64,000 nucleotides of DNA from sequence record PQ464590.1. One strand, 5' to 3'. The notes under the pieces are model-generated. The model worked only from the letters and a program-made list of their open reading frames with translations. It searched no databases and was not told the origin of the DNA. Each line of letters opens with the position of its first letter. Positions within the stretch are counted from its first letter, which is position 1. The position numbers were made by a program, and so were the translations under genes. Positions 29,435 to 63,954 of the stretch are shown here, piece by piece.

Positions 29435-30586
29435 TTAGAAATCCGCTAACACTTCTTTCATGTACTTCTGTAATACTTCTTTGTAATCAACTTTCTTCCC
29501 GTTGTACAAAGCAAAAGCTAGACCTTGACGGTTCAACACATTAGGCAACGTTCCTGTTACCGCAGCGGCGAACTCTTTACGGTCCAAATGTTTATGCTTC
29601 TGAACGAAGCTTTCAACATCCGCCTGTAGCTTATTATAGCACATAAAAATGAGATTTTCCATTTTTTTGATTTTTTCTAAGCAATAATTGTCAGTACTGA
29701 ACAATTGTTTCAGGTCATCGGATGCACCCTGCAATACAGCCTCGTATAAGCGAGAATCCACGTTGATACTGTCCTTTGTGAAGTGTAACGCACAATACCA
29801 GTCAGTCTTCACCTTGAACATCGTGCCGTCTTTTAGACGAACTACGAATCCCTCAACATCCTGCATAGAACGGACAGCTTCAATACTTTCCTTCAACGTT
29901 TCACGCATAGGGAATGTCTTATTGATCTTACCATCTTTCGCCAATACAGAACGTTCGTATAGTACTGGGAAACGTTTTTTCAGTTCATCCGCATCAAGAA
30001 GTTCACCCGTAATACGATGACGCAAACTCAGTACTGTCAACTCATCTTTTTGGTACGGTAGAACAATACGAAACTCAGGTGATGTATACTCCAGTGTTAC
30101 TGTATATTGGGCTAAGTCAGCTTCACGTAATGCATCGTACAAAACCGTATCTGCTAGGATCATTGCATTACTATTGTAAGCATGTTCAGAGTGCAAAGAA
30201 CCATTAGATTTCACACGAAGAACACCGTCATTGTCGGTAAAAGTACTGATAACTGAACCGTCAAGTTTATCCATTGCTGAATCAATTTCAGTACTAAGTA
30301 CATCTTTTGGGAACATTACAAATGGATTCTCATACGCGTTGAAAAACTTGTCCATAGTACGGCAAGCACACCGAATTAGAGAACCGTCTTCGCGAATTTC
30401 CCACATCGATCCACGGGCTTCAAGTGCACTATCTGCAAGGAAGTCCGAGTACGATGCTAAGCGGTACGAGAAGATACGATACGTACCACCACCGATACTA
30501 GTGAAGTCTTTGAAGAAAAAGGCTTCATTAGTTTCGCATAGTTTGTTTAGATTAGAATAAATCTGGATGATCGATTCTTGTGCCAT
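29435..30586 (-). CDS. rnlA: RNA ligase 1 (T4 gp63-like)
   Basis: MDKFFN, KLDGSVI, EYTSP, EGFVV, FKVKTDWY; start MAQES. Confidence 0.92.
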   Translation of the reverse strand: MAQESIIQIYSNLNKLCETNEAFFFKDFTSIGGGTYRIFSYRLASYSDFLADSALEARGSMWEIREDGSLIRCACRTMDKFFNAYENPFVMFPKDVLSTEIDSAMDKLDGSVISTFTDNDGVLRVKSNGSLHSEHAYNSNAMILADTVLYDALREADLAQYTVTLEYTSPEFRIVLPYQKDELTVLSLRHRITGELLDADELKKRFPVLYERSVLAKDGKINKTFPMRETLKESIEAVRSMQDVEGFVVRLKDGTMFKVKTDWYCALHFTKDSINVDSRLYEAVLQGASDDLKQLFSTDNYCLEKIKKMENLIFMCYNKLQADVESFVQKHKHLDRKEFAAAVTGTLPNVLNRQGLAFALYNGKKVDYKEVLQKYMKEVLADF

Positions 30587-31217
30587 TTTTATTTGCCTCT
30601 TCAAAAGCTTTTAGAATTCCAGGGAATTCAATTTCTATATCAGTAAAGAAATCATCACGTAGTTTGAACCCTTCAAAGTCCATGTCTAAGTGGTCATAAT
30701 CAATGATACTACAGCGTTTATATGAAATCAAGTACGGTTGCACTTTCTTCATGTACTGGATAGCTTTCAGTACTGCTTCGTACTCAGGTACATCACGTTC
30801 CATCATTAGCTGGAAATGTTCATCCTCTCCTAATGATTCACTAATAACCAAATATGTTTCTTTACTATTTTTATCGTGGATTGTAACTTCATCACTCCAC
30901 GGAACAATAACACCCCAATTACTGTACAATGTACTTTTAGGTACTTGATATGTAGTACTGAAAACTGCTACATTATCATTTATTTCAGAATCATGAATAA
31001 TGTAAGTAATGTCTCCACGTGGCTTAGATGAAGCCATATGTAACTGGAAACGATCTTCAGGATTGCATAGTCCTTCATATACATCAAAATACACATTCTT
31101 TAGTATAGTATTTTTGTCAACTATATCCCGTAAGCCATAACGTTGAACTAGGTTGTGATAACCAAACTTCTGCAATAGTACAGTACTGGCAAGCACATTT
31201 ATAAGATTAGTAATCAT
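30552..31217 (-). CDS. FQ-motif family protein
   Basis: GEDEHFQLMM. Confidence 0.7.
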   Translation of the reverse strand: MITNLINVLASTVLLQKFGYHNLVQRYGLRDIVDKNTILKNVYFDVYEGLCNPEDRFQLHMASSKPRGDITYIIHDSEINDNVAVFSTTYQVPKSTLYSNWGVIVPWSDEVTIHDKNSKETYLVISESLGEDEHFQLMMERDVPEYEAVLKAIQYMKKVQPYLISYKRCSIIDYDHLDMDFEGFKLRDDFFTDIEIEFPGILKAFEEANKNGTRIDHPDLF

Positions 31218-31770
31218 AATCTGGACTCATCCTCTCTTTACAAACATCAAAATATTCTCCAATTGGAAGATTCTGCCATTTGTCGAATGGAATGTTCGTT
31301 CTTAGTTTATAACAATTAGTTTTCATATGGTATCCGATATCCCACATTTCAATTAGTGGTAATGCGTCAGGGATATCCACAATAGTACTACCTTGGAAAT
31401 TAGTTTCTTCGGACATAAATTGACATGGATCATATAGCACTTCTGGATCGTTCAGATTCATCAACAATAGCTGATCCTTTTCAATGCTATAGAACATAAT
31501 TGTCCCTTCACCAGTACTGATCTGGATAGGAGAACTATCAGAATTGAAAAAGAATGCATTCGTGTCGATGTCAATTTGTAGAAACTGTTTTTCATAGTTC
31601 TTTATTGTTAGAATCATATCACTGTAGTTGAATTCGTAATGATGTATATTCTGCCAATCAAAATAATCATTCGGTAAAGAACAGTCATGCTCCATTAGCG
31701 TATTGAAATCGAATTGACGCAGATCACCCATACCACTAATAATCGCATCAATAAAATTCATGTTAGTCAT
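31207..31770 (-). CDS. FQ-motif family protein
   Basis: SEETNFQGSTIVD. Confidence 0.75.
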   Translation of the reverse strand: MTNMNFIDAIISGMGDLRQFDFNTLMEHDCSLPNDYFDWQNIHHYEFNYSDMILTIKNYEKQFLQIDIDTNAFFFNSDSSPIQISTGEGTIMFYSIEKDQLLLMNLNDPEVLYDPCQFMSEETNFQGSTIVDIPDALPLIEMWDIGYHMKTNCYKLRTNIPFDKWQNLPIGEYFDVCKERMSPDYDY

Positions 31771-31783
31771 ATTTGTCTCCTAT

Positions 31784-31811
31784 TAAAAAGCCCAGTTGCA
31801 GTACTGGGCTT
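31784..31811 (-). terminator. intrinsic terminator
   Basis: AAGCCCAGT-ACTGCA-ACTGGGCTT then TTT. Confidence 0.8.
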
Positions 31812-31815
31812 GATT

Positions 31816-32580: not shown

Positions 32581-33117
32581 TTACTCCTTAAAAAAGTGTT
32601 TCAATGCGTTTACTGCACCCGTGAAAATATAATTATGGTTCAGTTCTATAGAACTCAACTGCTTATGTGCTTTGTCTAGTAGTACCATATTATCATGGTC
32701 CGCATTATACAAAGTACTGAACTGGAACATAGCATCTTCTGCATAAATGTCAGGGATATGATATATTTCAGCATCTGATAGTTTCAATACTAAAGTCTCA
32801 CCCTTATCAAACAACGCGTACTTGATGCCATTGTCAGTTCTTTTTGATTCAGTGTTGAATCCCATACTGAAGCTGTACTTTTCTACGATACCATTTGATT
32901 CATGGATTATATTCAAGTACGGACGGTTCGTTGCAGTCTTGATAATAGTGCATATAGGCCGACCATGTTGGTCGTTATATATCCGTACTGTTTCACCACG
33001 TTGTTCATGCTCATAATACAACGTAAATCCTGGTTGTGACCCATTCAGTACTTCAGGATCTTCACCCCGTTCTAATTCATAAAAAATACTTTCAATAAAA
33101 TTCATCTTGAGATTCAT
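32581..33117 (-). CDS. FQ-motif family protein
   Basis: AEDAMFQFSTLY. Confidence 0.75.
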   Translation of the reverse strand: MNLKMNFIESIFYELERGEDPEVLNGSQPGFTLYYEHEQRGETVRIYNDQHGRPICTIIKTATNRPYLNIIHESNGIVEKYSFSMGFNTESKRTDNGIKYALFDKGETLVLKLSDAEIYHIPDIYAEDAMFQFSTLYNADHDNMVLLDKAHKQLSSIELNHNYIFTGAVNALKHFFKE

Positions 33118-33713
33118 TTCAACTCCGGTACATCAGGAATTTGTAAGTCCACAATTGGATATGTGTACGTGAGAATGATCTTGTCGAACTCCCAGTATTC
33201 TTTTGCTTTCTCTACCAGAAGTACATCAATCATTTCGTCCTGAATATACACGTACTCAGTGGGAATGTCAACGACTAATGAAGTCTGGAACATAACTGCT
33301 TCGTCAGACTTGTCAACCATATGTGCATTAGTACTGCCATATCCGTCACTCATCCACGTGAATTTACCAGTGTTCGAAGCACGGATAGTCACGGTATCGT
33401 CAACTAAATCACGAACCATGTTAGTCTCGACATTACGATAATCAGCACGGATTGCTACGGCTGCAACACCAGCCAACTGATATGAGCTAGCATCTTCAGA
33501 GGTTTGTACCAGTACTGTCACTTTCCCATGAATACGTGTTGCTTTGATTTGAAAAGCTGGCTCATCATCGTCATCAAGCCAGCAGTTCTGTTTATACACA
33601 TGATTATCCACATCATTCTCAACGAAACCGAACTGTACTAATTCTTCTGCTGAAGCTTGGTTGACGAACTTAAACATCTTCCACAACTTCTGGATTTGCA
33701 GTACGTGATTCAT
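33114..33713 (-). CDS. FQ-motif family protein
   Basis: DEAVMFQTSLVVD. Confidence 0.75.
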   Translation of the reverse strand: MNHVLQIQKLWKMFKFVNQASAEELVQFGFVENDVDNHVYKQNCWLDDDDEPAFQIKATRIHGKVTVLVQTSEDASSYQLAGVAAVAIRADYRNVETNMVRDLVDDTVTIRASNTGKFTWMSDGYGSTNAHMVDKSDEAVMFQTSLVVDIPTEYVYIQDEMIDVLLVEKAKEYWEFDKIILTYTYPIVDLQIPDVPELK

Positions 33714-33728: not shown

Positions 33729-33752
33729 AAAAGGCATCATAACAGATGCCTT
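33729..33752 (-). terminator. intrinsic terminator
   Basis: AAGGCATC-TGTTAT-GATGCCTT then TTT. Confidence 0.75.
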
Positions 33753-34227
33753 AGATATCGTCAAGACCTGGGAGTATAATGTTTACATCGGCATTAAATC
33801 CCATAATCCTACAGTACTTGAATGCTGGATGTGACTCTATACGACGAGCAGTTTGCCAGATTGGTAGAAGCTGTTCGACATCGCACAGTACTGAATTCTG
33901 GAATATCTCTTCTTCAGTGTCTAAACTTACTGTACCTGAATCCGATTGGTTGTAAAAGTAATTCGCATGTTCTAACGGTTCGGTACTACTAAGTGAACAA
34001 AAGAATTCACCAGGTCGCCAATCCAACAACGGGCCGTACTTATATCCGTTGTGTTCTAGACGAATAGACATAGTCCCATATTTTCGTAGTATTAGAATGC
34101 ATGACTTATTACTTACCCCATGTTCGAACGGTCGCCAATCAATTGTATAAGGACCACCCGAATACACAATCCGAGTAGTTCCATCATACGTGCAAGCCAA
34201 TGCATACATCTGGTCGATTACATTCAT
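33751..34227 (-). CDS. FQ-motif family protein
   Basis: TEEEIFQNSVLCD. Confidence 0.75.
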   Translation of the reverse strand: MNVIDQMYALACTYDGTTRIVYSGGPYTIDWRPFEHGVSNKSCILILRKYGTMSIRLEHNGYKYGPLLDWRPGEFFCSLSSTEPLEHANYFYNQSDSGTVSLDTEEEIFQNSVLCDVEQLLPIWQTARRIESHPAFKYCRIMGFNADVNIILPGLDDI

Positions 34228-36315: not shown

Positions 36316-36348
36316 AAAAAAGCCGTGTACAATACTATACACAGCTTA
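36316..36348 (-). terminator. probable intrinsic terminator
   Basis: GCTGTGTA..TACACGGC imperfect stem followed by TTTTT. Confidence 0.6.
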
Positions 36349-36358
36349 AAGACCTTTG

Positions 36359-36670
36359 TCAATGAACATCCATCGTATAAAGACGTTCATCAATGAATTG
36401 TTGTGCTTGTTCAGCAGTCATCTCTTCTGGAGTTTCTAAGAACTGCATTAGATTAGGAAGTACTTGAAAAAAACTAACAAATGCAAGTACTGTTTCAGTA
36501 TCATAACTGTAACCCATAGGAACTACAGTACTCTTCCATGCACCAGCATGTTTATGTGCCAGTACTGACATCATATTCACACCATCTAATGAAACCCCGA
36601 TGTGACGATACCCAGTACTTTCATTATCATCCCAAAGCATAGTTGGGACTTTCAGTAGCATTTCAGCCAT
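36359..36670 (-). CDS. hypothetical protein
   Basis: ORF track; GAGG RBS. Confidence 0.7.
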   Translation of the reverse strand: MAEMLLKVPTMLWDDNESTGYRHIGVSLDGVNMMSVLAHKHAGAWKSTVVPMGYSYDTETVLAFVSFFQVLPNLMQFLETPEEMTAEQAQQFIDERLYTMDVH

Positions 36671-37205
36671 TTAGTACCTCATAAATTTGATTGAAATCGA
36701 ATTTGTCATATCCAATACACAGTACTAATAGATTTTCTGACATAGCTAAGTACTGACGAAGCTGGGACATTTCCAGCACTAACGATTGTACCATATCCAT
36801 TTCAATAGGCACTATCAACCCCTTCTGGAATACATCTTCTTCAGAATTGAGGTCCACTTCGCAAATCAAATTCTCTACGAAGTCATTGGAGTCCAGGTAA
36901 TTCACAGTACTGTTAGAATAATATGGTACTCTCATTTGATACCAACTATAACAATTCTTACCATACGTAGTACTATTCAGTGTATGATGTGATAATCCCA
37001 GAAACTGACCGTCATTACTAACACCAGAACCGACTATGATATCAAGCATCTCATCACGATCACCATCTGGAGTACGAATTAGTATCCTACGGGTTGAACG
37101 ACCCATCGTTGTAATCTGAATAATGTATCTTTCAGAATATATAGGGGCCGATGGCTGTTCATCCCAGTTTTGTAAAATGTCCAGTACTTTAGCTATGTAA
37201 TTCAC
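36663..37205 (-). CDS. FQ-motif family protein
   Basis: NSEEDVFQKGLIV. Confidence 0.75.
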   Translation of the reverse strand: MNYIAKVLDILQNWDEQPSAPIYSERYIIQITTMGRSTRRILIRTPDGDRDEMLDIIVGSGVSNDGQFLGLSHHTLNSTTYGKNCYSWYQMRVPYYSNSTVNYLDSNDFVENLICEVDLNSEEDVFQKGLIVPIEMDMVQSLVLEMSQLRQYLAMSENLLVLCIGYDKFDFNQIYEVLNG

Positions 37206-49405: not shown

Positions 49406-49406
49406 A

Positions 49407-53544: not shown

Positions 53545-53558
53545 AAAATTTCTCCCAT

Positions 53559-53591: not shown

Positions 53592-53598
53592 TGTCAAA

Positions 53599-55232: not shown

Positions 55233-55810
55233 ACAATTCCCCTCATGTATTCAGCAGCAAAAGCATCTAACTTATCTTTATGTAAAATAAGGTACTTGCA
55301 GAAGTTCACAGTATAAACACGGAACGGTACTTTGATATTCGATTCACGTAGTACTGAATATATTTCAAACGCAGCAGCTTCAGCACCATCTACAGTACTT
55401 TGTTGGAAAATCATCTCTTCAGTTAGTTCACTGAAATCGTACTTAGTAAATTCGGAAGCACTAGTACCATCAACATCAGTATCGTCGAATTTCTCAAACT
55501 GGAATCCAGTAGCTTTAGGATGATACTCAATATTGAAAATGTATCCAGGACGAATTGGACATGTGATATTACTATTACCAGCACTCCAAACTTCGAGTAC
55601 CCTAGCAGACAAATCATTCGTCCGAAGGTACTTTCTGTGCTGTAATTCTTCACCAGCAATATACGAATCATTCTGTACACAGTATCCAGTATTTTCATCA
55701 GGATCTTCCAGTACTGAAGAATAACCGTTCTCACAACAGTACAACATAATGACTAAGTACCGTGCGAATTCATGAGGACTAAAAAATGATACTTCTTTAT
55801 CTGTGTACAT
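55229..55810 (-). CDS. FQ-motif family protein
   Basis: TEEMIFQQSTVD; start MYTDK. Confidence 0.75.
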   Translation of the reverse strand: MYTDKEVSFFSPHEFARYLVIMLYCCENGYSSVLEDPDENTGYCVQNDSYIAGEELQHRKYLRTNDLSARVLEVWSAGNSNITCPIRPGYIFNIEYHPKATGFQFEKFDDTDVDGTSASEFTKYDFSELTEEMIFQQSTVDGAEAAAFEIYSVLRESNIKVPFRVYTVNFCKYLILHKDKLDAFAAEYMRGIV

Positions 55811-55947: not shown

Positions 55948-56649
55948 TCAAAACAAATCTGCACCAAATTCACGCATGAAATATTCATGATGCTTATCAG
56001 CCATCTCCGTCCATTCTCCCTTCGGTATTAGGTCATACAATTCCTGTACCGATTCAGGTTCTAAAACACTGTAAAAATGTAATCCATATACTGAATTGAA
56101 CTTGCAAAATGAATCCATGTAAAACTTCCATACTGAATACCATTGCCCATAATCACCTTGGATTGTACTGTTCTGGAAAAACGATTCCTGTACTGAATCT
56201 GAACTAATCGTCTTAGCGTGCATCTCTTTGGATAAATTTTTCAAACCATCAAAACGATTACCATGATCCATCAAATGAATTATGTCTTCATTCTTAGCGG
56301 ACATGTAATAACATGATGATGGATGGAATATCGGATTTATATCATGTTTGCCAGCATAAGGCTTGGAACAAAAATAAACGACACTTCCTGTCAAAAATGC
56401 ATCCCAAAAATCCCGTACCTTCCATGAACTAATCTTGGCACAATTGTTCACCGATGACATAATCGCTAAACCATGCTTGTCCAAATATACTGGTCCTTCT
56501 TTGCCCACACCTGGTTCGCCTACCTCATAACCGAATACGGCATTAACGGACTCAATATTTGGATTGATTTCCTGCAACATCACAATAGCAAGCATCTGCT
56601 TGAACATCACAAAATCTGATACGTCAATTTGTGGACCACACGGTTCCAT
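55948..56649 (-). CDS. FQ-motif family protein
   Basis: VQESFFQNSTIQ. Confidence 0.75.
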   Translation of the reverse strand: MEPCGPQIDVSDFVMFKQMLAIVMLQEINPNIESVNAVFGYEVGEPGVGKEGPVYLDKHGLAIMSSVNNCAKISSWKVRDFWDAFLTGSVVYFCSKPYAGKHDINPIFHPSSCYYMSAKNEDIIHLMDHGNRFDGLKNLSKEMHAKTISSDSVQESFFQNSTIQGDYGQWYSVWKFYMDSFCKFNSVYGLHFYSVLEPESVQELYDLIPKGEWTEMADKHHEYFMREFGADLF

Positions 56650-56658: not shown

Positions 56659-57270
56659 CTAACTTGTCTCTCGCAATAATTGCTTGTACGCCAATTCACA
56701 TACATGGAATGTCTCTTCACAGCACTCCACCTCTAAATCAACTGAATCAAAATCCTGATTGAATAATGCATTCACAATGAATGGTACAATGTACGATTCA
56801 TTCATATCCATCAACAATTCAAAATTCAATTCTTCTGTTCTGGTACGGATATCCTGTACTGAAGGTACTTGACGAACACTACTGTCTGGAAAACTAACTG
56901 TACTATCCGCTCCTAATCCACCTGTACCCATTCTCTTGAAAGGATTATCCAATGTACTGACCGATGTCCCACGCATCTTCTTATCAAGAACTGCGTTCGG
57001 ACGGAACAACATCGTAGGCATCTTGTGAATACTCATAACGCATAAATCACCTACTGATTCTAAGGAACAATACAACTGAATACCATGACGGGAACGAATG
57101 TATCTCGCATTACGCATGATAATCGTTCCTACATCATCATCAAAACGTACTACACGTGAATTCTCTGACTCGTACATCAGCCCATATAAGGGCTTCAGTA
57201 CTGAATCATAAAAATCCAAAGCTATCTGTACTTTGTTATCACTACTCAAAATTGAATTCCTTTGAATCAA
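56659..57270 (-). CDS. FQ-motif family protein (divergent)
   Basis: TEELNFELLMDM. Confidence 0.7.
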   Translation of the reverse strand: MIQRNSILSSDNKVQIALDFYDSVLKPLYGLMYESENSRVVRFDDDVGTIIMRNARYIRSRHGIQLYCSLESVGDLCVMSIHKMPTMLFRPNAVLDKKMRGTSVSTLDNPFKRMGTGGLGADSTVSFPDSSVRQVPSVQDIRTRTEELNFELLMDMNESYIVPFIVNALFNQDFDSVDLEVECCEETFHVCELAYKQLLRETS

Positions 57271-58261
57271 ATTTGGAACGTACGCGAATGGAATGAGCTA
57301 AATCACTTGTGCGTTCACCGTACTCAATCATTCTAGCACGCTGCTCTGCGATAATCAACTCCAAAATGATCGAAAAATCATCGTTCGTTTCGGACGCTTG
57401 AAGGTACTCAAGGTTCATATCTAATGTATTGAAATTGTACGGAATACGATCCTCACATGATGATGCTAAACACTCCGCCACTGTCGTATTCATTCTGGTA
57501 TGTACTAAGGAACCCTGGAACATGTACGCTTCCATATCGGAAGCTTGCAGTACTGGTACGCTCGTATTATTGTCCTCTGCATTATAACATACAATGTCCG
57601 CCCCCACTACTGCGGTACGCATGAATCTCCAACGATCCAATACGTACATACCACCCACTTTCTGACTCTGGGGATGACGTAACTCAATAATGTTATTCGA
57701 TTTCCATGCATCAGCATCTTTCTGTACTGAAATCTTTATCTCCCCCGAATTGTACCGTACTGAATAACGCTTCCCATTGATCTGGAAATATTCCTGCTGC
57801 CGATTGAACTGACGAGCATTCAACCAATCTGGCTCAATCTGCCATCCGAATACGGATAACATCAACTCCCATAACTGTATCGTCTTGGCAATTGTGTTCA
57901 TCGTCTTGTCATGCATCTTCACTAATTCTGGAATGTCACCGTCTGTGATATCCATAATATCAGGTGTCTTGATTTCCACGTAGCCCTCTTCTACACGTTT
58001 TTTCTGTGCAAGGTAATGAGCCATCCACATAAAATTGGATTTACCTGAACTACGACTTGAACCAATTACATTCAATTGCCCAGGAGCGAAACCACCGTTG
58101 ATTCCGCTAATCCCCATCATTGGTGTAGCGTACATCGATGCTATATCATAATCATATGTGAATGTACCTGGTGTACCACGATTAGCACGACCTTGAGCTT
58201 GGACATTGGTAGGAATCAATTTCTTGAAAGCATACGCATCAGCAACATTCATGAACGGCAT
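57242..58261 (-). CDS. FQ-motif family protein with an N-terminal extension bearing PolB-like and helicase-like motif fragments
   Basis: MEAYMFQGSLVH; YDIASMY; GGFAPGQLNVIGSSRSSGKS. Confidence 0.75.
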   Translation of the reverse strand: MPFMNVADAYAFKKLIPTNVQAQGRANRGTPGTFTYDYDIASMYATPMMGISGINGGFAPGQLNVIGSSRSSGKSNFMWMAHYLAQKKRVEEGYVEIKTPDIMDITDGDIPELVKMHDKTMNTIAKTIQLWELMLSVFGWQIEPDWLNARQFNRQQEYFQINGKRYSVRYNSGEIKISVQKDADAWKSNNIIELRHPQSQKVGGMYVLDRWRFMRTAVVGADIVCYNAEDNNTSVPVLQASDMEAYMFQGSLVHTRMNTTVAECLASSCEDRIPYNFNTLDMNLEYLQASETNDDFSIILELIIAEQRARMIEYGERTSDLAHSIRVRSKFDSKEFNFE

Positions 58262-59004
58262 TATAATTCCTCAATATCCTGTACTGTAGCTGGTTGTAAA
58301 CCGAAACGCTCTAATAACATCGGTACGTCATTAGGGTCAATGTCAATCCCTGGGCAATTGTACTTCTGAAGGTACGCCATCAACAACTCCACAACAGGAC
58401 TCATCGAACGGAATAACCAAGCCTCCGCATTCAAATTCGCATCTGAAGCGTACTGGTCAAAATCCTTCAATTTCATATCCACGTCTACTTTCCCACCCTT
58501 ACTGAACTGGTAAAACGTGTACTCACCGTTGTTCACAGGAGCGAATACTACGTTGCTCAACTGAGAACCAATAATGGTGTACTGACAGGAACGTTTATAC
58601 CGAGCATCCTCTGGGGTACGGAAAATAGCAACACGTGTACGAATATCCTGTACCGTTGTTGTTTCTTCACCTGTCTCTTCATTCTTCGTTTTAGATTCGG
58701 TTTGCTGACCCGTCAAATAATGATACACGCGATCCATGTATCCATTATCTGGTGTCTCAATCTCTTGTACTTCTTCTTGTACCAGGTCAGCATTAATCTG
58801 ACGTGCACCAATCTTATTCTGCATCTTAGCTTGTTCTTCAGGCGAAATCTTCAACGCATTACTGGTGTCCATATCTTCTGTACTGAAGAATTGATCCAAC
58901 ATGCGTACATTATTGTGCATGAATGTACTGATGTTCAAAATGTTCTTAGCTAATAGCAATGTTTCTACGTAACGGGATAACTTACCCTGACGCATTCTTT
59001 TCAT
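58261..59004 (-). CDS. hypothetical protein, possibly with a divergent FQ motif
   Basis: AEAWLFRSMS. Confidence 0.75.
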   Translation of the reverse strand: MKRMRQGKLSRYVETLLLAKNILNISTFMHNNVRMLDQFFSTEDMDTSNALKISPEEQAKMQNKIGARQINADLVQEEVQEIETPDNGYMDRVYHYLTGQQTESKTKNEETGEETTTVQDIRTRVAIFRTPEDARYKRSCQYTIIGSQLSNVVFAPVNNGEYTFYQFSKGGKVDVDMKLKDFDQYASDANLNAEAWLFRSMSPVVELLMAYLQKYNCPGIDIDPNDVPMLLERFGLQPATVQDIEEL

Positions 59005-59642
59005 TATTCTTCTCCATCTTTGCAGTACTGGTAAATTTCTTGAACGAATCTGTGATCGTCTTCGTCAAATTCTGGAATCACCTTCATCACAGCAACTAGC
59101 GATGCCATGCGGTGAACGAAACTGTACTTCAATATACTATCATGAAGGTACGATGTCAAGATCTCATTGAACAAATATCTCTCATCATGTATCAATGAAA
59201 GCTGGAATAACATCTCTTCTGTGTACTCACGTAGCAGCAAAACATTATGATCATCCGATGTTGAACTGTACTTATAACCCCTACGCATCGTCGTATGGAT
59301 ATTGAATAATGTATTGTCCTTTTCGAACAATGGTGTGCACGGTACATGCATGTTATTGCGTTCTTCACAATAAATTGGATCGTCAAATACAACAATACCT
59401 AATGATATTTTGTTCGTTGTGAATTCTGTACCGTACACTTCTTTATTGTCAGGGTTACGTGTTACATAACATTGCTGCGTATATAACTCTTTATTCATTG
59501 GTGCTTTCTGGGTAAGGTACTGTATTAACCGTACTAAGATGGAACCGTACCGTACTGCATCATTGTAATACTTCGGATTTGGCATTTTCATTCTCGAATA
59601 AAGGGGAGGGTAAACTCTTATCCCTGTGTGCGTAAAATTCAC
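59004..59642 (-). CDS. FQ-motif family protein
   Basis: TEEMLFQLSLIHD. Confidence 0.75.
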   Translation of the reverse strand: MNFTHTGIRVYPPLYSRMKMPNPKYYNDAVRYGSILVRLIQYLTQKAPMNKELYTQQCYVTRNPDNKEVYGTEFTTNKISLGIVVFDDPIYCEERNNMHVPCTPLFEKDNTLFNIHTTMRRGYKYSSTSDDHNVLLLREYTEEMLFQLSLIHDERYLFNEILTSYLHDSILKYSFVHRMASLVAVMKVIPEFDEDDHRFVQEIYQYCKDGEE

Positions 59643-60225
59643 GAACAGCTTGCATTCGCTCCTTTGGACTATTCTGGATTATAACACACATATGACCAAT
59701 GTCAACCCGTGCTGACAAAATCTTTTCGTACCTCAATGTACTCAACAAAATGAATGATAACAATTCCCAATATGTATGTACTAAACTCTCCTGGAAATAA
59801 TACTCCTCTGTCCACTCCGATAAATCAGGATATCTCTGGTACGACATATCCTCGTACTGAATCTGATTCGTATCCATACCTGTACTACTGGAATTACGAA
59901 CCTTCACAAATTTATCTTCTATTTTGTACGATACAACACAGGACTCATATGCTCCACTGTATATTGTACTACTGTAAAGCAATGAATTATTTGTCTGTAC
60001 CTCATCAGATAGAACACTAAAATAAGAATCGAATAATAGTTCTCGCGTTCTTGGGGGAGGTGGAATCATTCGAGTATCACCTATACTTATCTTGTACTCA
60101 TTGTTATGATAACCCCAAAGACCTACTACTAAATCTTTGTCATGGTACATTGTGTACAGAATAGCACAAATATCATCAGCTAATCCTAATGACTCTTCTA
60201 ATGTACTAGGAAGAATAAAACTCAT
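59560..60225 (-). CDS. FQ-motif family protein
   Basis: TEEYYFQESLVH; start MSFIL. Confidence 0.75.
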   Translation of the reverse strand: MSFILPSTLEESLGLADDICAILYTMYHDKDLVVGLWGYHNNEYKISIGDTRMIPPPPRTRELLFDSYFSVLSDEVQTNNSLLYSSTIYSGAYESCVVSYKIEDKFVKVRNSSSTGMDTNQIQYEDMSYQRYPDLSEWTEEYYFQESLVHTYWELLSFILLSTLRYEKILSARVDIGHMCVIIQNSPKERMQAVREFYAHRDKSLPSPLFENENAKSEVLQ

Positions 60226-60715
60226 CGTATCGTTTCTCCAATTGATGATATAACTGCTCGAACTCATTCAAGAATTTGTAGAACTCTCCCAGTACTATAA
60301 AAACGCTAGGAACATTCAATGCCCTACATTCTCTGAAATACTCTAATGTATAAAGTTCTAAATCGGTCAGTACTAAACTCTGCTGGAATTCTTCTTCTTC
60401 AGATAATAAAGGAATAGATATCTCTTTACTTTCTTCTGTTGAATAAGCCCCTAAACCCAGTACTGCGAATACAGTACTCTCTTCTAATAAAGACATCTCT
60501 ACATGTTTAGGTGATGCATAAGCTGTATAAGAATGACGTATGCTCTTATTCTCTCTAAGGAACAAAGTACTATGCGTACATAACTTCCATGAATCATCCC
60601 TGTTCTTGAACATCATTGACATTATCATAAGTGGATGATGATACATTGCATGTAACAGTACTGCTGTAGCTTTTGCTAATTCTTTTGCTGTATAACGAAA
60701 ATCAAAATGAATCAT
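60206..60715 (-). CDS. FQ-motif family protein
   Basis: SEEEEFQQSLVL. Confidence 0.75.
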   Translation of the reverse strand: MIHFDFRYTAKELAKATAVLLHAMYHHPLMIMSMMFKNRDDSWKLCTHSTLFLRENKSIRHSYTAYASPKHVEMSLLEESTVFAVLGLGAYSTEESKEISIPLLSEEEEFQQSLVLTDLELYTLEYFRECRALNVPSVFIVLGEFYKFLNEFEQLYHQLEKRYDEFYSS

Positions 60716-61170
60716 ATATGAACACCTTTTGGTAAAGGGAACAATCTCTCCATAGCATTCAGTACTACATATGTACTTCCATCAACATGTCTTTCTGTAC
60801 CATAATTACCGTACAGTGCGTAGTATATTCCGTTTATGAATCTCTGTGTATTAGAGAGTGCCATAAGACATTCTGTATTAGAAGGATCTGTTATGTCAAT
60901 GTATATGAATGATACACCCATCATAGTAAACGTACTTCCATTAGGAGAAAAAGACAAATTTCGGTACTCGGTTCGGTTACGCTGTGTCTTATTACCCTCT
61001 AGTATAAGTACCTCTCTGTTATAATCACGTACTGTAACACGATTGGAATTGTTCCTGCGAACATTGAAATGTAATGATGAATCTAATATGTCAGTACTGG
61101 GTAAGCTCATAAGAGAACGTATCATAGCACCGTACAGTACTCCCTCTCTTGTGTAATAATCGAATTTCAT
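60712..61170 (-). CDS. hypothetical protein (no FQ motif seen)
   Basis: ORF track; ATGA overlaps. Confidence 0.7.
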   Translation of the reverse strand: MKFDYYTREGVLYGAMIRSLMSLPSTDILDSSLHFNVRRNNSNRVTVRDYNREVLILEGNKTQRNRTEYRNLSFSPNGSTFTMMGVSFIYIDITDPSNTECLMALSNTQRFINGIYYALYGNYGTERHVDGSTYVVLNAMERLFPLPKGVHI

Positions 61171-61562
61171 GAATGGCGTAGTACCTGTAATGTAATAGGA
61201 TGATAATAATCTGGACCATAAACCGTCTGTAGTACCCTAGTTACACTTTTACAGTACTTTTGTGCTGCATGAATAACATAAGGGTCAACCCCACCGAAAT
61301 CAGTAACACACATCAGTTGGAACCACTGTGCTTCATTTTCATCAGATAATTCGATACATGATAAATCAACTAGTGGTGTCTTGTCAAGAATGAACTCTAA
61401 TTCATCAGCAGTGTAATGGATGAAATAATCCTCATATCCTGAAGTACCTTTGTTACCCCATGATGTATATTCAATCCTATCTTCACCTATCCTGATAGTC
61501 AGAACTTCAATCGCTCCTAGATTATAGTACATGATCTGTGCTTGTATATCTTGTGATATCAT
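61167..61562 (-). CDS. FQ-motif family protein
   Basis: NEAQWFQLMCV. Confidence 0.75.
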   Translation of the reverse strand: MISQDIQAQIMYYNLGAIEVLTIRIGEDRIEYTSWGNKGTSGYEDYFIHYTADELEFILDKTPLVDLSCIELSDENEAQWFQLMCVTDFGGVDPYVIHAAQKYCKSVTRVLQTVYGPDYYHPITLQVLRHS

Positions 61563-61576: not shown

Positions 61577-61936
61577 TTACTCAACTTGTACTATTATTCT
61601 TGTATTGAAAGTACAGTCCTTGTAGTTCTTCATTATCGTCTGAACTAAACGTAACATGTAATCATACGGTATACGACCATAGTCAGCCACTAAAGATTCT
61701 TGGAATAGTTCCTCTTCACTCATTAGATGTAAGGGTGGTAAATTCATAATACCATTCTTAGGAAGAACCAAGTACAGTACTGAATCATCCTGACCTGGAT
61801 TCTTGATATGCAGGATATATGGGTTCTGATGTGGCTCACCTTTCTTACATGATGGCAGTACTATACTATAGTAATGTGCACCAGTACTGTTGTTGTGCCA
61901 CATGAATACTTCTTCTGGCATGTCGATGTAGTCCAT
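61577..61936 (-). CDS. FQ-motif family protein (short subfamily)
   Basis: PPLHLMSEEELFQESLV. Confidence 0.75.
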   Translation of the reverse strand: MDYIDMPEEVFMWHNNSTGAHYYSIVLPSCKKGEPHQNPYILHIKNPGQDDSVLYLVLPKNGIMNLPPLHLMSEEELFQESLVADYGRIPYDYMLRLVQTIMKNYKDCTFNTRIIVQVE

Positions 61937-61937
61937 T

Positions 61938-62273
61938 CTATACTCCCACCTCTATTTTGTCATCATGGTCTTTTTTATTTGAGTTTATACAGTACTTCAA
62001 ATGTTTCTGAAGAGCTATCATTTGGTGTACCGTGATTGGATGTTCCCATACGCACATTAGTTGGAATAGTTCTTCTTCCGAAAGACTTTCTAAGTCAGGG
62101 AGACTGTACCGTTGAACTTCACCTTTCTCACTATATGTATTGTACCTAAAATCAGTTGAACCATCTTTTAGAACAATACAATGATCAAAGTTATCTGGAT
62201 GTGTGAAGTACAGAGTGTAGTCTTTTGAGATATTACTTCCTTTATATTCACGGTACTGTATATATAATTCCAT
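61938..62273 (-). CDS. FQ-motif family protein (short subfamily)
   Basis: PDLESLSEEELFQLMCVWEHP. Confidence 0.78.
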   Translation of the reverse strand: MELYIQYREYKGSNISKDYTLYFTHPDNFDHCIVLKDGSTDFRYNTYSEKGEVQRYSLPDLESLSEEELFQLMCVWEHPITVHQMIALQKHLKYCINSNKKDHDDKIEVGV

Positions 62274-62274: not shown

Positions 62275-62607
62275 TCAGTACTCCAATGTTAGTTCAAATG
62301 ATCTATATCCAGACCACTTGTTGATATTGTATTTTACATATTTCTGAACCATCAAAACGAAGTATATAGAACATGGTTCATCCCAAAGTAGCGAGGCTTG
62401 AAAGAATTCACTTTCATCCAGAATTGTCAAATCTGGAACTTTAATGCATGGTTCGTGTTCTTGTATATCTTGGATTTCAGTTTGTGGTTCATCTGTTCTC
62501 CAGTTATTATAGTACACAATGAAGTAATCATGGTCTTCTTCTTGCACCTGTACTTCAAACTCACCATTCGCTTCCCTGTAATAAGATACGATCACATTAG
62601 CTTTCAT
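62275..62607 (-). CDS. FQ-motif family protein (short subfamily)
   Basis: PDLTILDESEFFQASLLWDEP. Confidence 0.78.
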   Translation of the reverse strand: MKANVIVSYYREANGEFEVQVQEEDHDYFIVYYNNWRTDEPQTEIQDIQEHEPCIKVPDLTILDESEFFQASLLWDEPCSIYFVLMVQKYVKYNINKWSGYRSFELTLEY

Positions 62608-62933
62608 TAGTACTCCAGAATAAGATTAGCGTGTGAGCATCCGTTGTACACATGAAGGTTCTCCAATATGAACTCCTGTGCCGCGAGTACAAAGTATATC
62701 TGGTACGGTGCATCCCATATTAGTGAGGCTTGAAAAACCTCTTCCTCGGTCATGCGAGTAAAGTCTGGAATAGGAATGCTTGGTTTATAGTCATCATCGG
62801 ACTGAATTTTGAATGCAGGTGCAGCATTGTTTATTGAGTAGCACGCCACATAGTACTCCGATGATGTATCTCTAAGATGAAATTCATATTCACCATTGAC
62901 ATTGTAATAAAATAGTTCTACTTGTGTTTTCAT
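62607..62933 (-). CDS. FQ-motif family protein (short subfamily)
   Basis: PDFTRMTEEEVFQASLIWDAP. Confidence 0.78.
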   Translation of the reverse strand: MKTQVELFYYNVNGEYEFHLRDTSSEYYVACYSINNAAPAFKIQSDDDYKPSIPIPDFTRMTEEEVFQASLIWDAPYQIYFVLAAQEFILENLHVYNGCSHANLILEY

Positions 62934-62941
62934 TTTGATTC

Positions 62942-63274
62942 CTAGTATTCAAGACCGTATGAATAGAAAGTATCACCTTTCCATGTTGGTTGACGTTCGT
63001 AAACATATTTCTGGATAGCGTATACAAGATAGAATTCTAATGGTTCATCCCATACTACACTCGCTTGGAATAACTCTTCTTCTGATAGTGTTGTTAAATC
63101 TAGTACAGTATCATCATACGGGCCGTGATTGTCTATATGTTGGATGAGCCATTCTAACTCTAAGTTTTCGTTATGACATAGAATCAACATATAGTCAGTT
63201 CCAGTACAGTCAACGTGAGCCTCATAACATCCGTCATCCCATTCGTAATAGTTTATCCCGATAGTGTGTTTCAT
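62942..63274 (-). CDS. FQ-motif family protein (short subfamily)
   Basis: LDLTTLSEEELFQASVVWDEP; start MKHTI. Confidence 0.78.
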   Translation of the reverse strand: MKHTIGINYYEWDDGCYEAHVDCTGTDYMLILCHNENLELEWLIQHIDNHGPYDDTVLDLTTLSEEELFQASVVWDEPLEFYLVYAIQKYVYERQPTWKGDTFYSYGLEY

Positions 63275-63609
63275 TAGTACTCCAACTCTATATCCCAAGT
63301 GAATGAACCATACTCATATTCATATAGTACATCATAACCATACTTCTGAATAGCATGAACAAGTTCAATATCCAATTCATGGTCCCAGACACACATCTCC
63401 TGGAAATATTCTTCTTCAGAGAGTGTAGGTAAGTTCTTCACATCTTTACGTGGGGTCGCAAGTTTATCCATAGTACATTCAATTGTACCCAGATTATATG
63501 AGAGCCGAATTACCGTTTTCGTTTTATCATCGAATGCATGGAACTCTACAGAGTCAGCTAGTGAAAAGTATATCCTACATTTTAGATACTTACTTCTCAA
63601 AAAGTACAT
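63274..63609 (-). CDS. FQ-motif family protein (short subfamily)
   Basis: LPTLSEEEYFQEMCVWDH. Confidence 0.78.
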   Translation of the reverse strand: MYFLRSKYLKCRIYFSLADSVEFHAFDDKTKTVIRLSYNLGTIECTMDKLATPRKDVKNLPTLSEEEYFQEMCVWDHELDIELVHAIQKYGYDVLYEYEYGSFTWDIELEY

Positions 63610-63618
63610 GTTGCACTC

Positions 63619-63954
63619 CTAGTATATCAAGTCTCTGAATACAAGTTCATTCGATTTTTTTAGGTACTCAAGATTTTCTAGCACGTATTTTTGGACGGCT
63701 AACATTTTTTCAGTCTCTGAAAATTCTTGAACGAGAGAATATTGGAATAGCTCTTCTTCCGATAGTACAGTCAAATCTGGAACTGTACCCGATTTTTCCC
63801 ACGAGTGTATCATACCATGTTGCCATACGCAACCGTTCGAACCAAATAGATATTCGAGGAAAAAGATGTTATCTACCTTACAACGAATCAGACTTACAGA
63901 AGAATATGGAAGGTATTTGAAGTTCACGGTTATAATGTCGTACGTTGTTTTCAT
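63619..63954 (-). CDS. FQ-motif family protein (short subfamily)
   Basis: PDLTVLSEEELFQYSLV. Confidence 0.78.
   Translation of the reverse strand: MKTTYDIITVNFKYLPYSSVSLIRCKVDNIFFLEYLFGSNGCVWQHGMIHSWEKSGTVPDLTVLSEEELFQYSLVQEFSETEKMLAVQKYVLENLEYLKKSNELVFRDLIY

What the first reader, a model, noticed from the sequence alone, without database searches (positions are those of the whole stretch)
30552..63954. Array of about 40 diverse proteins sharing an E-E-x-x-F-Q-x-S-[T/L]-[V/I] motif: candidate modular effector system
Seen: by manual reading, 37 ORFs carry a clear acidic-helix FQ motif (for example TEEELFQLSTV, SESTLFQLSTV, TEEMIFQQSTV, SEEELFQASVV, PEEDHFQYSTL), and about 8 more carry divergent versions. 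It usually lies roughly 40-80 aa from the C-terminus and is followed by a helical segment, while the N-terminal parts show no evident similarity. From 44.2 kb to the window end almost every gene is a member, often translationally coupled. I recognise no named family with this signature. Inference: a variable domain plus a constant docking module, like F-box or SOCS-box adaptors. Many different target-binding domains could be routed to one shared partner such as a protease, a polymerase, a scaffold or an injection/packaging machine. It could be a large host-takeover or anti-defence library.
Basis: partly seen in the sequence, partly recalled or inferred. Interest (0 to 1): 0.95.

Follow-up and report, generated by a model that had tools for sequence, protein, structure and literature searches.

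The report
Giant fast-evolving FQ-motif phage protein family
A jumbo bacteriophage of Erwinia devotes about a tenth of its genes (36 in this window, at least 68 genome-wide) to one previously unrecognised family of small acidic proteins that share only a ~20-residue "EE-x-x-FQ-x-S-T-V" island; it is probably an early-expressed repertoire of host-interaction proteins, but its function is unknown.

Summary
36 minus-strand genes in 30.5-64 kb carry the motif (strict form 26 times, against about 0.1 in shuffles and 0 in the upstream 30 kb), and about 5 more carry degenerate versions. The window is the last 64 kb of Erwinia phage Hallingskeid (366 kb, RaK2/121Q-type jumbo phage). A piecewise scan finds 68 members genome-wide, none in the structural or replication block. 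Relatives (EJP2, 121Q/phAPEC6, CBB, RaK2, fHe-Yen9) carry the family too.

Sequence similarity between paralogs is confined to about 22 residues. AlphaFold models of a small and a large member (pTM 0.80 and 0.78) each give one compact alpha+beta domain, with the motif as the first helix of a helical hairpin on a beta-meander. This favours a constant scaffold with variable surface over unrelated domains plus a docking box.

There is no Pfam, PDB or PADLOC relative. Genes form overlapping trains behind sigma70-type promoters, next to early and counter-defence genes. Homologs are absent from the phAPEC6 virion proteome. Each copy is under purifying selection (dN/dS about 0.18) but evolves about twice as fast as neighbours, with copy-number turnover.

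Function remains inferred. In passing I found a conserved ~460-nt structured RNA candidate at 38938-39396.

The parts
30552..31217 (-). FQ-family member, large class (221 aa, F135)
   Evidence: motif profile hit
31207..31770 (-). FQ-family member (187 aa, F125)
   Evidence: leave-one-out E 1e-5
32581..33117 (-). FQ-family member (178 aa, F131)
33114..33713 (-). FQ-family member (199 aa, F142)
33751..34227 (-). FQ-family member (158 aa, F109)
36663..37205 (-). FQ-family member (180 aa, F126; G at +3)
44176..44661 (-). FQ-family member (161 aa, F102)
   Evidence: ortholog in L013 dN/dS 0.16
44658..45170 (-). FQ-family member (170 aa, F142, short 29-aa tail)
45130..45597 (-). degenerate member (F-F-V-Q in place of F-Q)
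   Evidence: conserved ortholog in EJP2 (52% identity) and L013
45572..46162 (-). FQ-family member (196 aa, F131); the slowest-evolving member against EJP2 (61% identity)
46529..47155 (-). degenerate member (F-L in place of F-Q)
47152..47766 (-). degenerate member (F-K in place of F-Q; its best EJP2 match keeps FQ)
47766..48401 (-). FQ-family member (211 aa, F155)
48349..48885 (-). FQ-family member (178 aa, F110)
48857..49426 (-). FQ-family member (189 aa, F127)
49407..50021 (-). FQ-family member (204 aa, F131)
   Evidence: tblastn motif match to Asteriusvirus phages
50023..50619 (-). FQ-family member (198 aa, F138)
50609..51196 (-). FQ-family member (195 aa, F135)
51189..51854 (-). FQ-family member (221 aa, F158)
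51847..52407 (-). FQ-family member (186 aa, F125); large member modelled
   Evidence: AlphaFold pLDDT 76.8, pTM 0.78; BFVD matches
52400..52945 (-). FQ-family member (181 aa, F108; E at +3)
52942..53544 (-). FQ-family member (200 aa, F135); four tandem EJP2 genes all match it best
53545..53598 (-). intergenic gap with an 11/12 sigma70-type promoter (TTGACA-N17-TACAAT)
53599..54138 (-). FQ-family member (179 aa, F119; divergent, D-C at +3/+4)
   Evidence: EJP2 ortholog 38% identity with the same variant
54128..54715 (-). FQ-family member (195 aa, F127)
54696..55232 (-). FQ-family member (178 aa, F121)
55229..55810 (-). FQ-family member (193 aa, F135)
55948..56649 (-). FQ-family member (233 aa, F158)
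56659..57177 (-). degenerate member (F-E in place of F-Q)
57242..58261 (-). FQ-family member, outlier (339 aa, F248, extra ~110 aa at the N-terminus)
   Evidence: weak PHROG hit in the extension
58261..59004 (-). possible degenerate member (F-R in place of F-Q)
   Evidence: weakest assignment
59004..59591 (-). FQ-family member (195 aa, F129)
   Evidence: profile score 22 bits without being a seed
59560..60225 (-). FQ-family member (221 aa, F144)
60206..60715 (-). FQ-family member (169 aa, F110)
61167..61562 (-). FQ-family member, small class (131 aa, F81)
61577..61936 (-). small-class member (119 aa, F78)
61938..62273 (-). small-class member (111 aa, F70)
62275..62607 (-). small-class member (110 aa, F69)
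62607..62933 (-). small-class member (108 aa, F67)
62942..63274 (-). small-class member (110 aa, F69); small member modelled
   Evidence: AlphaFold pLDDT 87.4, pTM 0.80; BFVD matches TM 0.57-0.70
63274..63609 (-). small-class member (111 aa, F69)
63619..63954 (-). small-class member (111 aa, F70); first gene of the train, 46 bp from the record end
36334..36362 (-). 11/12 sigma70-type promoter (TTGACA-N17-TATAGT) inside the first sub-array
33736..33764 (-). 10/12 sigma70-type promoter (TTGACG-N17-TATGAT) upstream of 33114-33713

Best explanation
What it is (shown). The region holds 36 clear and about 5 degenerate members of a phage-specific paralogous family with at least 68 members in Erwinia phage Hallingskeid. 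Each member is a small, acidic, soluble protein without signal peptide or membrane segment. The only sequence shared across the family is a ~20-residue island. Residue shares by position relative to F: S/T at -5 (51%), E at -4 (80%), E at -3 (58%), hydrophobic at -1 (71%), F, Q, S at +3 (64%), T or L at +4 (77%), V/I/L at +5 (84%), D/E at +7 (63%).

How it is built (predicted). In the models of both size classes tested, the island is the first helix of a two-helix hairpin. The hairpin follows an N-terminal antiparallel beta-meander and is followed by a closing beta-strand, all within one compact domain. The large class adds an N-terminal helix, a long loop and a C-terminal helix. I therefore read the island as the keystone of one fold: a helix N-cap, acidic first turn, a buried aromatic residue, a turn, and the cap of the next helix. 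The rest of the protein, meaning the sheet, loops and termini, has diverged freely.

How it is expressed (inferred from sequence). Genes run in long, overlapping, same-strand trains punctuated by host-type sigma70 promoters. They lie directly downstream of a 22-kb block dense in near-consensus sigma70 promoters and next to RNA-repair, NAD-salvage and DNA-methylase genes. They are probably read by host RNA polymerase early in infection and stay in the cytoplasm.

What it does (inferred). The family is most likely a diversified repertoire of non-enzymatic binding proteins. Each copy would be specialised, through its own constrained variable surface, for a different host or competitor target, serving host takeover or counter-defence. 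The repertoire is renewed by tandem duplication and loss.
For: Family and motif.

Genome-wide census: 68 hits and 0 in shuffled controls.

One compact domain with the same element order in both models:
- Small member: E2-11, E17-23, E28-34, E40-46, E55-57, H65-73 (motif), H81-97, E102-109; pLDDT 87, pTM 0.80.
- Large member: H4-20, six strands, H117-130 (motif), H133-145, E153-158, then helices; pTM 0.78.
- The motif and next helix have the highest pLDDT in the small model (93-96).

Full-length structural matches are only to uncharacterised proteins of slurp01, PBECO4, RaK2 and fHe-Yen9.

No enzyme signature: only F and Q are invariant. There is no Pfam, PADLOC or PDB hit.

Physical properties: acidic, median pI 4.8; only one member exceeds a simple hydrophobic-stretch threshold, and no signal-peptide or transmembrane predictor was run.

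Layout and promoters: 50 of 63 junctions are coupled, with 11/12 sigma70 promoters in the gaps. Upstream, 21 of 41 gaps hold a promoter matching 10/12 or better, against 1.8 expected. Five of six CBB members lie in the block its authors propose as early.

Not in virions: 0 of 15 phAPEC6 motif proteins are among its 62 virion proteins.

Functional but fast-evolving: 25 ortholog pairs have median dN/dS 0.18 (0.07-0.53) and dN 0.056, against 0.025 for neighbours. The N-terminal parts are 81-90% conserved within ortholog pairs.

Birth and death: the window has 4 small genes where L013 has 1. Four EJP2 tandem genes match one Hallingskeid gene. Against EJP2, members are 25-38% identical or undetectable, while embedded non-family genes are 59-80% identical.
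Against: - The shared fold rests on two AlphaFold models whose alignments were largely made of the paralogs themselves. I could not superpose them or inspect burial of F and Q.
- Foldseek hit lists for the two models do not overlap at significant levels.
- Profile-profile similarity between the size classes covers only 22 columns.
- Half of the conserved island positions are polar (E, E, Q, S, D). That is more than a purely structural keystone needs and would suit a shared binding surface.
- Early expression is inferred from promoter consensus only. No transcript or protein data exist for this phage.
- The virion proteome is from a relative and has limited sensitivity.
- No target, partner or phenotype is known for any member in any phage.
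Confidence: 0.5

Rival explanations
1. Adaptor library. The island is a common docking epitope. Through it, about 70 different binding proteins deliver their targets to one shared partner, for example a phage- or host-encoded ATP-dependent protease, RNA polymerase or a chaperone.
For: - A single island with conserved polar residues (E 80%, E 58%, Q, S 64%, D/E 63%) sits in otherwise unalignable paralogs. This is the pattern expected of a shared interaction site.
- The phage encodes a ClpP-like protease in the window (11189-11809). Two further genes elsewhere are annotated as ATP-dependent proteases.
- Each paralog's variable part is itself under purifying selection.
Against: - The island is predicted to be an integral helix of a compact domain, not a separable box.
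- The N-terminal parts carry no recognisable binding domains.
- Size classes are narrow.
- The conserved polar residues sit where helix caps would be.
- No co-varying partner gene was identified.
Confidence: 0.17
2. Self-association module. The conserved helical hairpin is an interface through which paralogs form homo- or hetero-oligomers, giving combinatorial assemblies.
For: - Co-transcribed, translationally coupled neighbours would be made together in similar amounts.
- The conserved part is a helix-turn-helix hairpin, a common oligomerisation element.
Against: - Monomer models are already compact with high pTM.
- There is no heptad-like repeat.
- Members occur in three separate genome regions and in very different numbers in related phages, which argues against a fixed stoichiometric assembly.
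Confidence: 0.1
3. Packaged or injected internal proteins. The island would be a targeting signal for incorporation into the capsid or for ejection with the DNA.
For: - The family lies near one end of the deposited linear record.
- Large myoviruses are known to package polymorphic internal proteins (established knowledge of T4 internal proteins).
Against: - 0 of 15 phAPEC6 homologs are in its 62-protein virion proteome.
- None of the members in 121Q is annotated as structural.
- The island is internal and folded, not an N-terminal cleavable peptide.
- The promoters are host-type, not late-type. No TATAAATA occurs on the coding strand above 30 kb.
Confidence: 0.04
4. Shared proteolytic processing site. 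The proteins would be cut after the invariant Gln by a sequence-specific protease, as in viral polyprotein processing.
For: An acidic stretch followed by an aromatic residue and Gln superficially resembles sites cut after Gln by 3C/NIa-type cysteine proteases (general knowledge; no letters recalled here).
Against: - The residue after Gln is highly variable and often bulky (L 20%, A 14%, Q 13%, Y 12%).
- The site sits inside a predicted high-confidence helix.
- The only proteases found in the window are a ClpP homolog and the head-maturation protease, neither of that type.
Confidence: 0.03
5. Functionless duplicates. The array would be neutral debris of runaway tandem duplication, and the motif would be what happens to survive.
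For: Degenerate copies exist, and copy number varies between close relatives.
Against: - All 25 ortholog pairs have dN/dS of 0.53 or less, with median 0.18.
- No frameshifts or internal stops were seen in any member.
- The family persists across phage genera infecting nine host genera.
Confidence: 0.03

Closest known systems
Lineage-specific multigene families of large DNA viruses. One example is the ~35-copy zinc-ribbon expansion in Bacillus phage G noted by Iyer et al. 2021 (PMC7824862). By general knowledge, others are the MGF families of African swine fever virus and the ankyrin or Bcl-2-like families of poxviruses.
   Same: - Dozens of tandem, same-strand paralogs in the non-core part of a very large viral genome.
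- Rapid divergence and copy-number turnover with each copy under purifying selection.
- A presumed role in host interaction.
   Different: - No sequence or fold relationship to any of them.
- Here the conserved part is reduced to about 20 residues of a fold with no PDB match.
- The family makes up about 10% of all genes.
- It was not noted in the jumbo-phage survey.
Early-gene, hyperplastic regions of T4-like phages: clusters of small ORFs of unknown function behind strong sigma70-type early promoters (established knowledge of T4). The block CBB_390-546 was proposed as early by Buttimer et al. 2017 (PMC5259590).
   Same: - Same strand and dense host-type promoters.
- Small non-structural proteins adjacent to RNA-repair and nucleotide-metabolism genes.
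- CBB members of the family lie in that proposed early block.
   Different: T4 early ORFs are mostly unrelated singletons. Here most belong to one family arranged in translationally coupled trains.
F-box and SOCS-box substrate adaptors
   Same: One short conserved helical element is shared by many otherwise dissimilar proteins.
   Different: - In those families the box is a separable module joined to unrelated, recognisable interaction domains of very different sizes, and it binds a defined partner.
- Here no separable module, no recognisable second domain and no partner is seen.
PHROG families of unknown function: phrog_30548, 13866, 33987, 34017, 34516, 23379, 32531, 38478 and 22855
   Same: Individual members match these clusters, mostly through the motif segment.
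   Different: The clusters are not linked to each other. Only 5 of 26 large members reach any of them, so the superfamily is not recognised in that classification.
Uncharacterised proteins of RaK2, PBECO4, slurp01 and fHe-Yen9 in the BFVD structure library (for example A0A1C3S6H0, H6X4J2, L7TLC1, H6X4N8)
   Same: Full-length fold matches of the same size classes: TM 0.57-0.70 for the small class and 0.43-0.52 for the large class. They come from the same phage clade.
   Different: None has a name or known function, so they extend the family without explaining it.

Membership tests
Modular adaptor proteins of the F-box / SOCS-box kind | The conserved box is an independently folding module separable from the rest of the protein | tested here: not met
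   Both AlphaFold models give one compact domain (pTM 0.80 and 0.78). The motif helix lies between an N-terminal sheet and a C-terminal closing strand. This is prediction, not experiment.
Modular adaptor proteins of the F-box / SOCS-box kind | Variable parts are diverse, recognisable interaction domains of differing architecture | tested here: not met
   No Pfam domain was found in any of 10 members. Lengths fall into narrow classes. The beta-meander comes first in both models.
Modular adaptor proteins of the F-box / SOCS-box kind | The box binds one common partner | not testable with these tools
   No interaction data exist, and no complex prediction tool was available.
Viral lineage-specific multigene family (a kind, not a homologous family) | Many paralogs in tandem in the accessory part of a large viral genome | tested here: met
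   36 in the window and 68 genome-wide, in three regions, with none in the replication or structural block.
Viral lineage-specific multigene family (a kind, not a homologous family) | Copy-number turnover and accelerated divergence between related viruses, with copies kept functional | tested here: met
   Copy number differs (4 genes against 1) with L013, and EJP2 shows a four-gene tandem expansion. Median dN is 0.056 against 0.025 for neighbours, and median dN/dS is 0.18.
Packaged internal proteins of T4-type phages | Presence in purified virions | tested here: not met
   0 of 15 phAPEC6 homologs appear in the published 62-protein virion proteome. This was tested in a relative only.
Packaged internal proteins of T4-type phages | N-terminal cleavable capsid-targeting peptide | tested here: not met
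   The only conserved element lies at about two-thirds of the length. N-termini show no shared signal.
Any curated protein family or solved fold | Significant sequence match to Pfam, PADLOC or PDB sequences | tested here: not met
   Pfam best E-value is 0.1. PADLOC gives none. PDB profile searches with A4 and A5 give 0 hits at E of 1 or less.
Any curated protein family or solved fold | Significant structural match to a solved structure | tested here: not met
   Foldseek of the small model against PDB gives best E 0.24 and TM 0.33.
Substrates of a Gln-specific processing protease | Small residue after the scissile Gln, an accessible site, and a cognate protease encoded nearby | tested here: not met
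   The position after Q is variable and often bulky. The site lies in a helix. The only proteases found are ClpP-like and head-maturation types.

The most novel reading that the evidence does not exclude
The FQ island is a universal docking epitope. On this reading, the phage encodes a library of about 70 single-domain binders that all plug into one shared machine, for example its own ClpP-type or other ATP-dependent protease, or host RNA polymerase. That would be a programmable substrate-adaptor system in a bacteriophage, functionally analogous to eukaryotic F-box or SOCS-box systems but built on a new fold.
Probability: 0.12. Interest if true: 0.9.

Novelty: new variant of a known kind. Interest (0 to 1): 0.66.

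Why it matters
More than 80% of the genes of RaK2/121Q-type jumbo phages are annotated as hypothetical. This result shows that a large share of that dark matter, about 10% of all genes in Hallingskeid, is a single family. It has also expanded in phages of Escherichia, Klebsiella, Salmonella, Yersinia, Pectobacterium and Erwinia.

The family can now be recognised by one short signature and two structural models. Dozens of orphan genes become one tractable question: what does this scaffold bind?

The family's features are those of genes engaged in host-virus conflict: early-type promoters, exclusion from virions, fast turnover, and purifying selection on each copy. It is therefore a natural place to look for new host-takeover or counter-defence functions.

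The conserved structured RNA found in passing, in the same block, adds a second unexplored element shared by the whole clade.

Tried and rejected
- BLASTP all-against-all links only the eight small genes and one further pair of members, 54696-55232 with 60206-60715.
- hhalign of ortholog-group profiles with the motif removed gave no pair above 10% probability. The first attempt timed out.
- Leave-one-out segment profiles found no cross-member signal outside the motif. Two script errors came first.
- Chou-Fasman propensity averaging was too crude and gave only weak trends consistent with the models.
- The exhaustive profile search of 1.84 billion proteins gave only 29 hits, nearly all orthologs of window genes from close uncultured relatives. 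It gave no new clades or names.
For A4 it found 74 pattern matches, none confirmed by tblastn.
- The back-translated motif scan of viral contigs returned only 5 loci.
- No promoter was found in the 46 bp (plus 152 bp across the record junction) upstream of the first array gene.
- The idea that the 711-bp gap element is multi-copy was rejected. The extra "places" are short promoter-like matches.
- The cleavage-site idea and the packaged-protein idea were considered and set aside for the reasons given under the rival explanations.
- The loose regex wrongly flagged the cytidyltransferase and methyltransferase genes. They are not members.

While weighing hypotheses in my reasoning I recalled from memory a few short (4-7 residue) consensus motifs. 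These were cleavage sites of viral cysteine proteases, some bacterial peptide-docking motifs and one toxin-family motif.

Full report
IDENTITY OF THE WINDOW

The window is 100% identical to the last 64 kb of Erwinia phage Hallingskeid (PQ464590.1, 366,158 bp). Window position 1 corresponds to record position 302,159. Hallingskeid is a contractile-tailed jumbo phage isolated on Erwinia aphidicola. Its describers place it in the group 2.2 jumbo phages with RaK2, 121Q/PBECO4 and CBB (PMC11780129). Every gene in 30.5-64 kb is annotated "hypothetical protein", apart from one cytidyltransferase and one DNA methyltransferase.

THE OBSERVATION

Almost all genes lie on the minus strand. A regex scan and a motif-anchored profile find the island in 36 genes. 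Six lie at 30552-37205 and thirty at 44176-63954. Thirty of the 37 genes between 44.2 kb and the window end are clear members.

Five of the other seven carry degenerate versions in which Q is replaced or displaced. For one of these, its best EJP2 match retains FQ.

The strict form of the motif occurs 26 times. Residue shuffles give a mean of 0.07, and the 61 genes of the upstream 30 kb give 0. In a leave-one-out test, 30 of the 35 seed members still score E<0.05 against a profile built from the other paralogs.

The motif lies at a median 0.66 of protein length. Among the 36 curated members it is 29-92 residues from the C-terminus, median about 61. Fifty of 63 gene junctions overlap or are 15 bp or less apart.

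HOW FAR THE SIMILARITY REACHES

- BLASTP links only the eight ~110-aa genes at 61167-63954 and one further pair of members, 54696-55232 with 60206-60715.
- In a full-length alignment of 26 large members, only F and Q are invariant.
- I built ortholog-group profiles from metagenomic relatives and removed the motif. No pair of N-terminal parts then reached even 20% hhalign probability (0 of 231).
- Leave-one-out profiles give median z=11 for the 22-residue motif window. The first 45 residues, the middle and the C-terminal tail give z near 0.
- Between the small-class and large-class alignments, only 22 columns align (91.5% probability, E 9e-7).
- Across 85 instances from four phages, anchored on FQ, the shares are: S/T 51% at -5, E 80% at -4, E 58% at -3, hydrophobic 71% at -1, S 64% at +3, T or L 77% at +4, V/I/L 84% at +5 and D/E 63% at +7.

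STRUCTURE

A small member (62942-63274, alignment of 41 sequences) gives a confident AlphaFold model: pLDDT 87.4, pTM 0.80. It has four long antiparallel strands and a short fifth, then helix 65-73 carrying the motif, helix 81-97 and a closing strand 102-109.

A large member (51847-52407, alignment of 59 sequences) gives pLDDT 76.8, pTM 0.78. It has an N-terminal helix, six strands and a low-confidence loop. Then come helix 117-130 carrying the motif, helix 133-145, a strand and C-terminal helices.

The order of core elements is the same in both, and each model is one compact domain. In both, S/T at -5 and the acidic residues sit at the start of the motif helix, and D/E at +7 sits just before the second helix. 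This is where helix-capping residues would be.

Foldseek finds nothing significant in the PDB for the small model (best E 0.24). Profile searches of PDB sequences return nothing. In the viral predicted-structure library, the small model matches ~110-120-aa uncharacterised proteins of slurp01, PBECO4 and RaK2 (TM 0.57-0.70). The large model matches ~195-210-aa uncharacterised proteins of RaK2 and fHe-Yen9 phages (TM 0.43-0.52).

Caveats: I could not superpose the two models or read burial, and the two hit lists do not overlap significantly.

DISTRIBUTION

A piecewise scan of the rest of the Hallingskeid genome found 32 further members. The pieces were never joined.
- 8 at record 76-86 kb.
- 18 at 97-122 kb.
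- 6 at 263-284 kb.
- None in 1-76 kb.
- None in the 122-262 kb replication and structural block.
- None in shuffled copies of the same 932 ORFs.

The total is 68, about 10% of the 682 annotated features. The members outside the window are mostly 118-199 aa.

In related phages:
- EJP2 has a syntenic block in which at least 30 of 72 genes carry the motif.
- 121Q and phAPEC6 have 15-17 in one 40-kb stretch.
- CBB has 6 in 50 kb.

An exhaustive profile search of 1.84 billion proteins returned only 29 significant hits, nearly all orthologs from close uncultured relatives. The family appears confined to this phage clade. Pfam and PADLOC give nothing. Only 5 of 26 large members reach any PHROG, each a different one of unknown function. 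Non-family genes embedded in the array each hit one PHROG at 1e-42 to 1e-133. I found no paper describing the family.

EXPRESSION CONTEXT

The few gaps in the array hold sigma70-type promoters:
- TTGACA-N17-TACAAT upstream of 52942-53544.
- TTGACA-N17-TATAGT at 36334-36362.
- Three more sites matching 10 of 12 positions.

No T4-type late box occurs on the coding strand above 30 kb.

The first 22.7 kb of the record continues the same strand upstream across the record junction. There, 21 of 41 intergenic gaps carry a promoter matching 10/12 or better, against 1.8 expected from shuffles. Many are the same TTGACA-N17-CATAAT.

Downstream of the array lie an Rnl1-type RNA ligase, polynucleotide kinase, NAD-salvage genes, Sir2, DNA ligase, dCMP deaminase and a ClpP homolog.

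The CBB authors proposed the block that holds five of the six CBB members found here as the early, host-takeover region (PMC5259590).

In phAPEC6, none of the 15 motif proteins is among the 62 proteins detected in virions (PMC7247149).

Members are acidic (median pI 4.8), and only one exceeds a simple hydrophobic-stretch threshold. No dedicated signal-peptide or transmembrane predictor was run.

EVOLUTION

I compared the window with a collinear uncultured relative (L013). The 25 family orthologs have median identity 89.8%, dN 0.056, dS 0.33 and dN/dS 0.18 (range 0.07-0.53). Eleven neighbouring genes have 94.2%, 0.025, 0.32 and 0.09.

Identity within ortholog pairs is 81-90% across the N-terminal parts and 92-93% at the motif. 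Each copy's private part is therefore constrained.

The window has four small genes where L013 has one.

Against EJP2, embedded non-family genes are 59-80% identical. Most members are 25-38% identical or undetectable. Four tandem EJP2 genes all match one Hallingskeid gene best.

INTERPRETATION

Shown:
- One very large, clade-restricted family exists.
- Its conservation is confined to about 20 residues.
- It lies in coupled trains behind host-type promoters.
- Each copy is under purifying selection, with faster change than neighbours and copy-number turnover.
- Homologs are absent from a relative's virion proteome.
- It has no known sequence or fold relative.

Predicted: a single alpha+beta domain with the island as the first helix of a hairpin.

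Inferred: early cytoplasmic expression, and a role as a diversified repertoire of binding proteins for host takeover or counter-defence.

Its core idea, a shared contact site, is not excluded, because half of the conserved positions are polar.

Rivals considered are self-association, packaging, a cleavage site and neutral debris. Each has specific evidence against it, given in the rival explanations.

DECLARED SLIP

While weighing hypotheses in my reasoning I recalled from memory several short consensus motifs. These were viral protease cleavage sites, bacterial docking peptides and one toxin-family motif.

IN PASSING

The 711-bp gap at 38795-39505 is 81.7% identical to its EJP2 counterpart, while the adjacent methyltransferase coding sequence is only 68.5% identical. 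Homologs occur in 71 records of this clade, always in an unannotated gap between co-oriented genes.

A nine-sequence alignment supports 73 base pairs in 16 helices, 27 of them with compensatory double changes.
- Paired cells: 94.9%, against 85.3% in shuffles.
- Double-change pairs: 27, against 12.8 in shuffles and 2-9 with slid partners.
- Covariation score: 0.337, against 0.157 shuffled and 0.084 or less slid.
- No shuffle of 500 reached the observed values.

The core maps to 38938-39396 on the minus strand. Rfam 15 has no match, and I found no paper.

Noticed in passing
window 38938-39396 (minus strand), within the 711-bp gap 38795-39505: Candidate new large structured RNA (~430-460 nt core).
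- It is more conserved than flanking coding DNA: 81.7% identity against 68.5% for the adjacent coding sequence, compared with EJP2.
- It is present in 71 RaK2/121Q/CBB/GAP32/BF/Munch-type phage records, always in an unannotated gap.
- The consensus fold has 73 pairs in 16 helices, 27 with compensatory changes. All shuffle and slide controls are passed.
- A long-range helix, 39374-39369 with 38943-38938, closes the core.
- It is preceded by a conserved extended -10 box (39479-39470) and a hairpin of variable sequence (39465-39444).
- Rfam has no match, and no paper was found.
- The five tiny plus-strand ORFs annotated here are probably spurious.
   Followed up: partly
PQ464590.1 record 76-122 kb and 262-284 kb (outside the window; loci L022, L023, L021): 32 further members of the FQ family, mostly of a mid-size class (118-199 aa). 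They include tight clusters at 100.1-102.5 kb, 105.8-112.2 kb and 262.8-264.9 kb. The window holds only about half of the family.
   Followed up: yes
L001 (record 1-22,683), same strand as the array and contiguous with it across the record junction: A very dense series of near-consensus sigma70 promoters. 21 of 41 gaps match 10/12 or better, against 1.8 expected, and many are identical TTGACA-N17-CATAAT. They sit in front of small genes, as in a classic early region. The first array gene has no promoter of its own within 198 bp. The record junction is therefore probably not a physical genome end relevant to transcription.
   Followed up: partly
L001 23,542-33,003 (record coordinates): Eight tandem plus-strand paralogs annotated 'regulator of chromosome condensation' (RCC1-like), a second multigene family in this phage. 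Proteins listed as 'DNA condensation protein' are among the virion proteins of phAPEC6 in its published proteome; I did not test whether they are homologs of these RCC1-like genes.
   Followed up: no
window 46140-46532, 31816-32550, 43660-44130, 41838-42221, 35485-36048: Non-family genes embedded in the array that are unusually well conserved. They are 62-80% identical to EJP2, dN/dS is 0.05-0.06 for the two (46140-46532 and 43660-44130) that fall inside L013, and each matches a single PHROG at 1e-47 to 1e-133. All are of unknown function. Their constant presence inside a fast-changing array is unexplained.
   Followed up: partly
window 11189-11809: The gene annotated 'protease' is a ClpP homolog (Pfam PF00574, just above its cut-off). 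Two further genes elsewhere in the genome (record 141.7 kb and 222.3 kb) are annotated as ATP-dependent proteases. They are possible partners if the adaptor reading were true.
   Followed up: partly
window 57242-58261: The only member with a long N-terminal extension (339 aa, motif at 248). The extension gives a weak PHROG match to a segment of DnaB-like helicases (E 8e-5). It may be the one true fusion in the family.
   Followed up: no
window 34754-35485: A hypothetical protein inside the first sub-array with a borderline HD-domain (phosphohydrolase) match (Pfam PF01966, 21.7 bits against a cut-off of 22).
   Followed up: no
window 2609-2641 and 39470-39499: The same promoter-like sequence (a TTGGGA-type -35 with an extended -10), 91% identical over 33 nt, recurs upstream of the RNA candidate and downstream of the PhoH-like gene. 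A similar site lies at 42251-42280.
   Followed up: no
L005 (IMGVR_UViG_3300012988_000001, 366,160 bp): A metagenomic viral contig only 2 bp longer than Hallingskeid carries the same motif-bearing sequence. It is probably a near-identical phage sampled independently.
   Followed up: no
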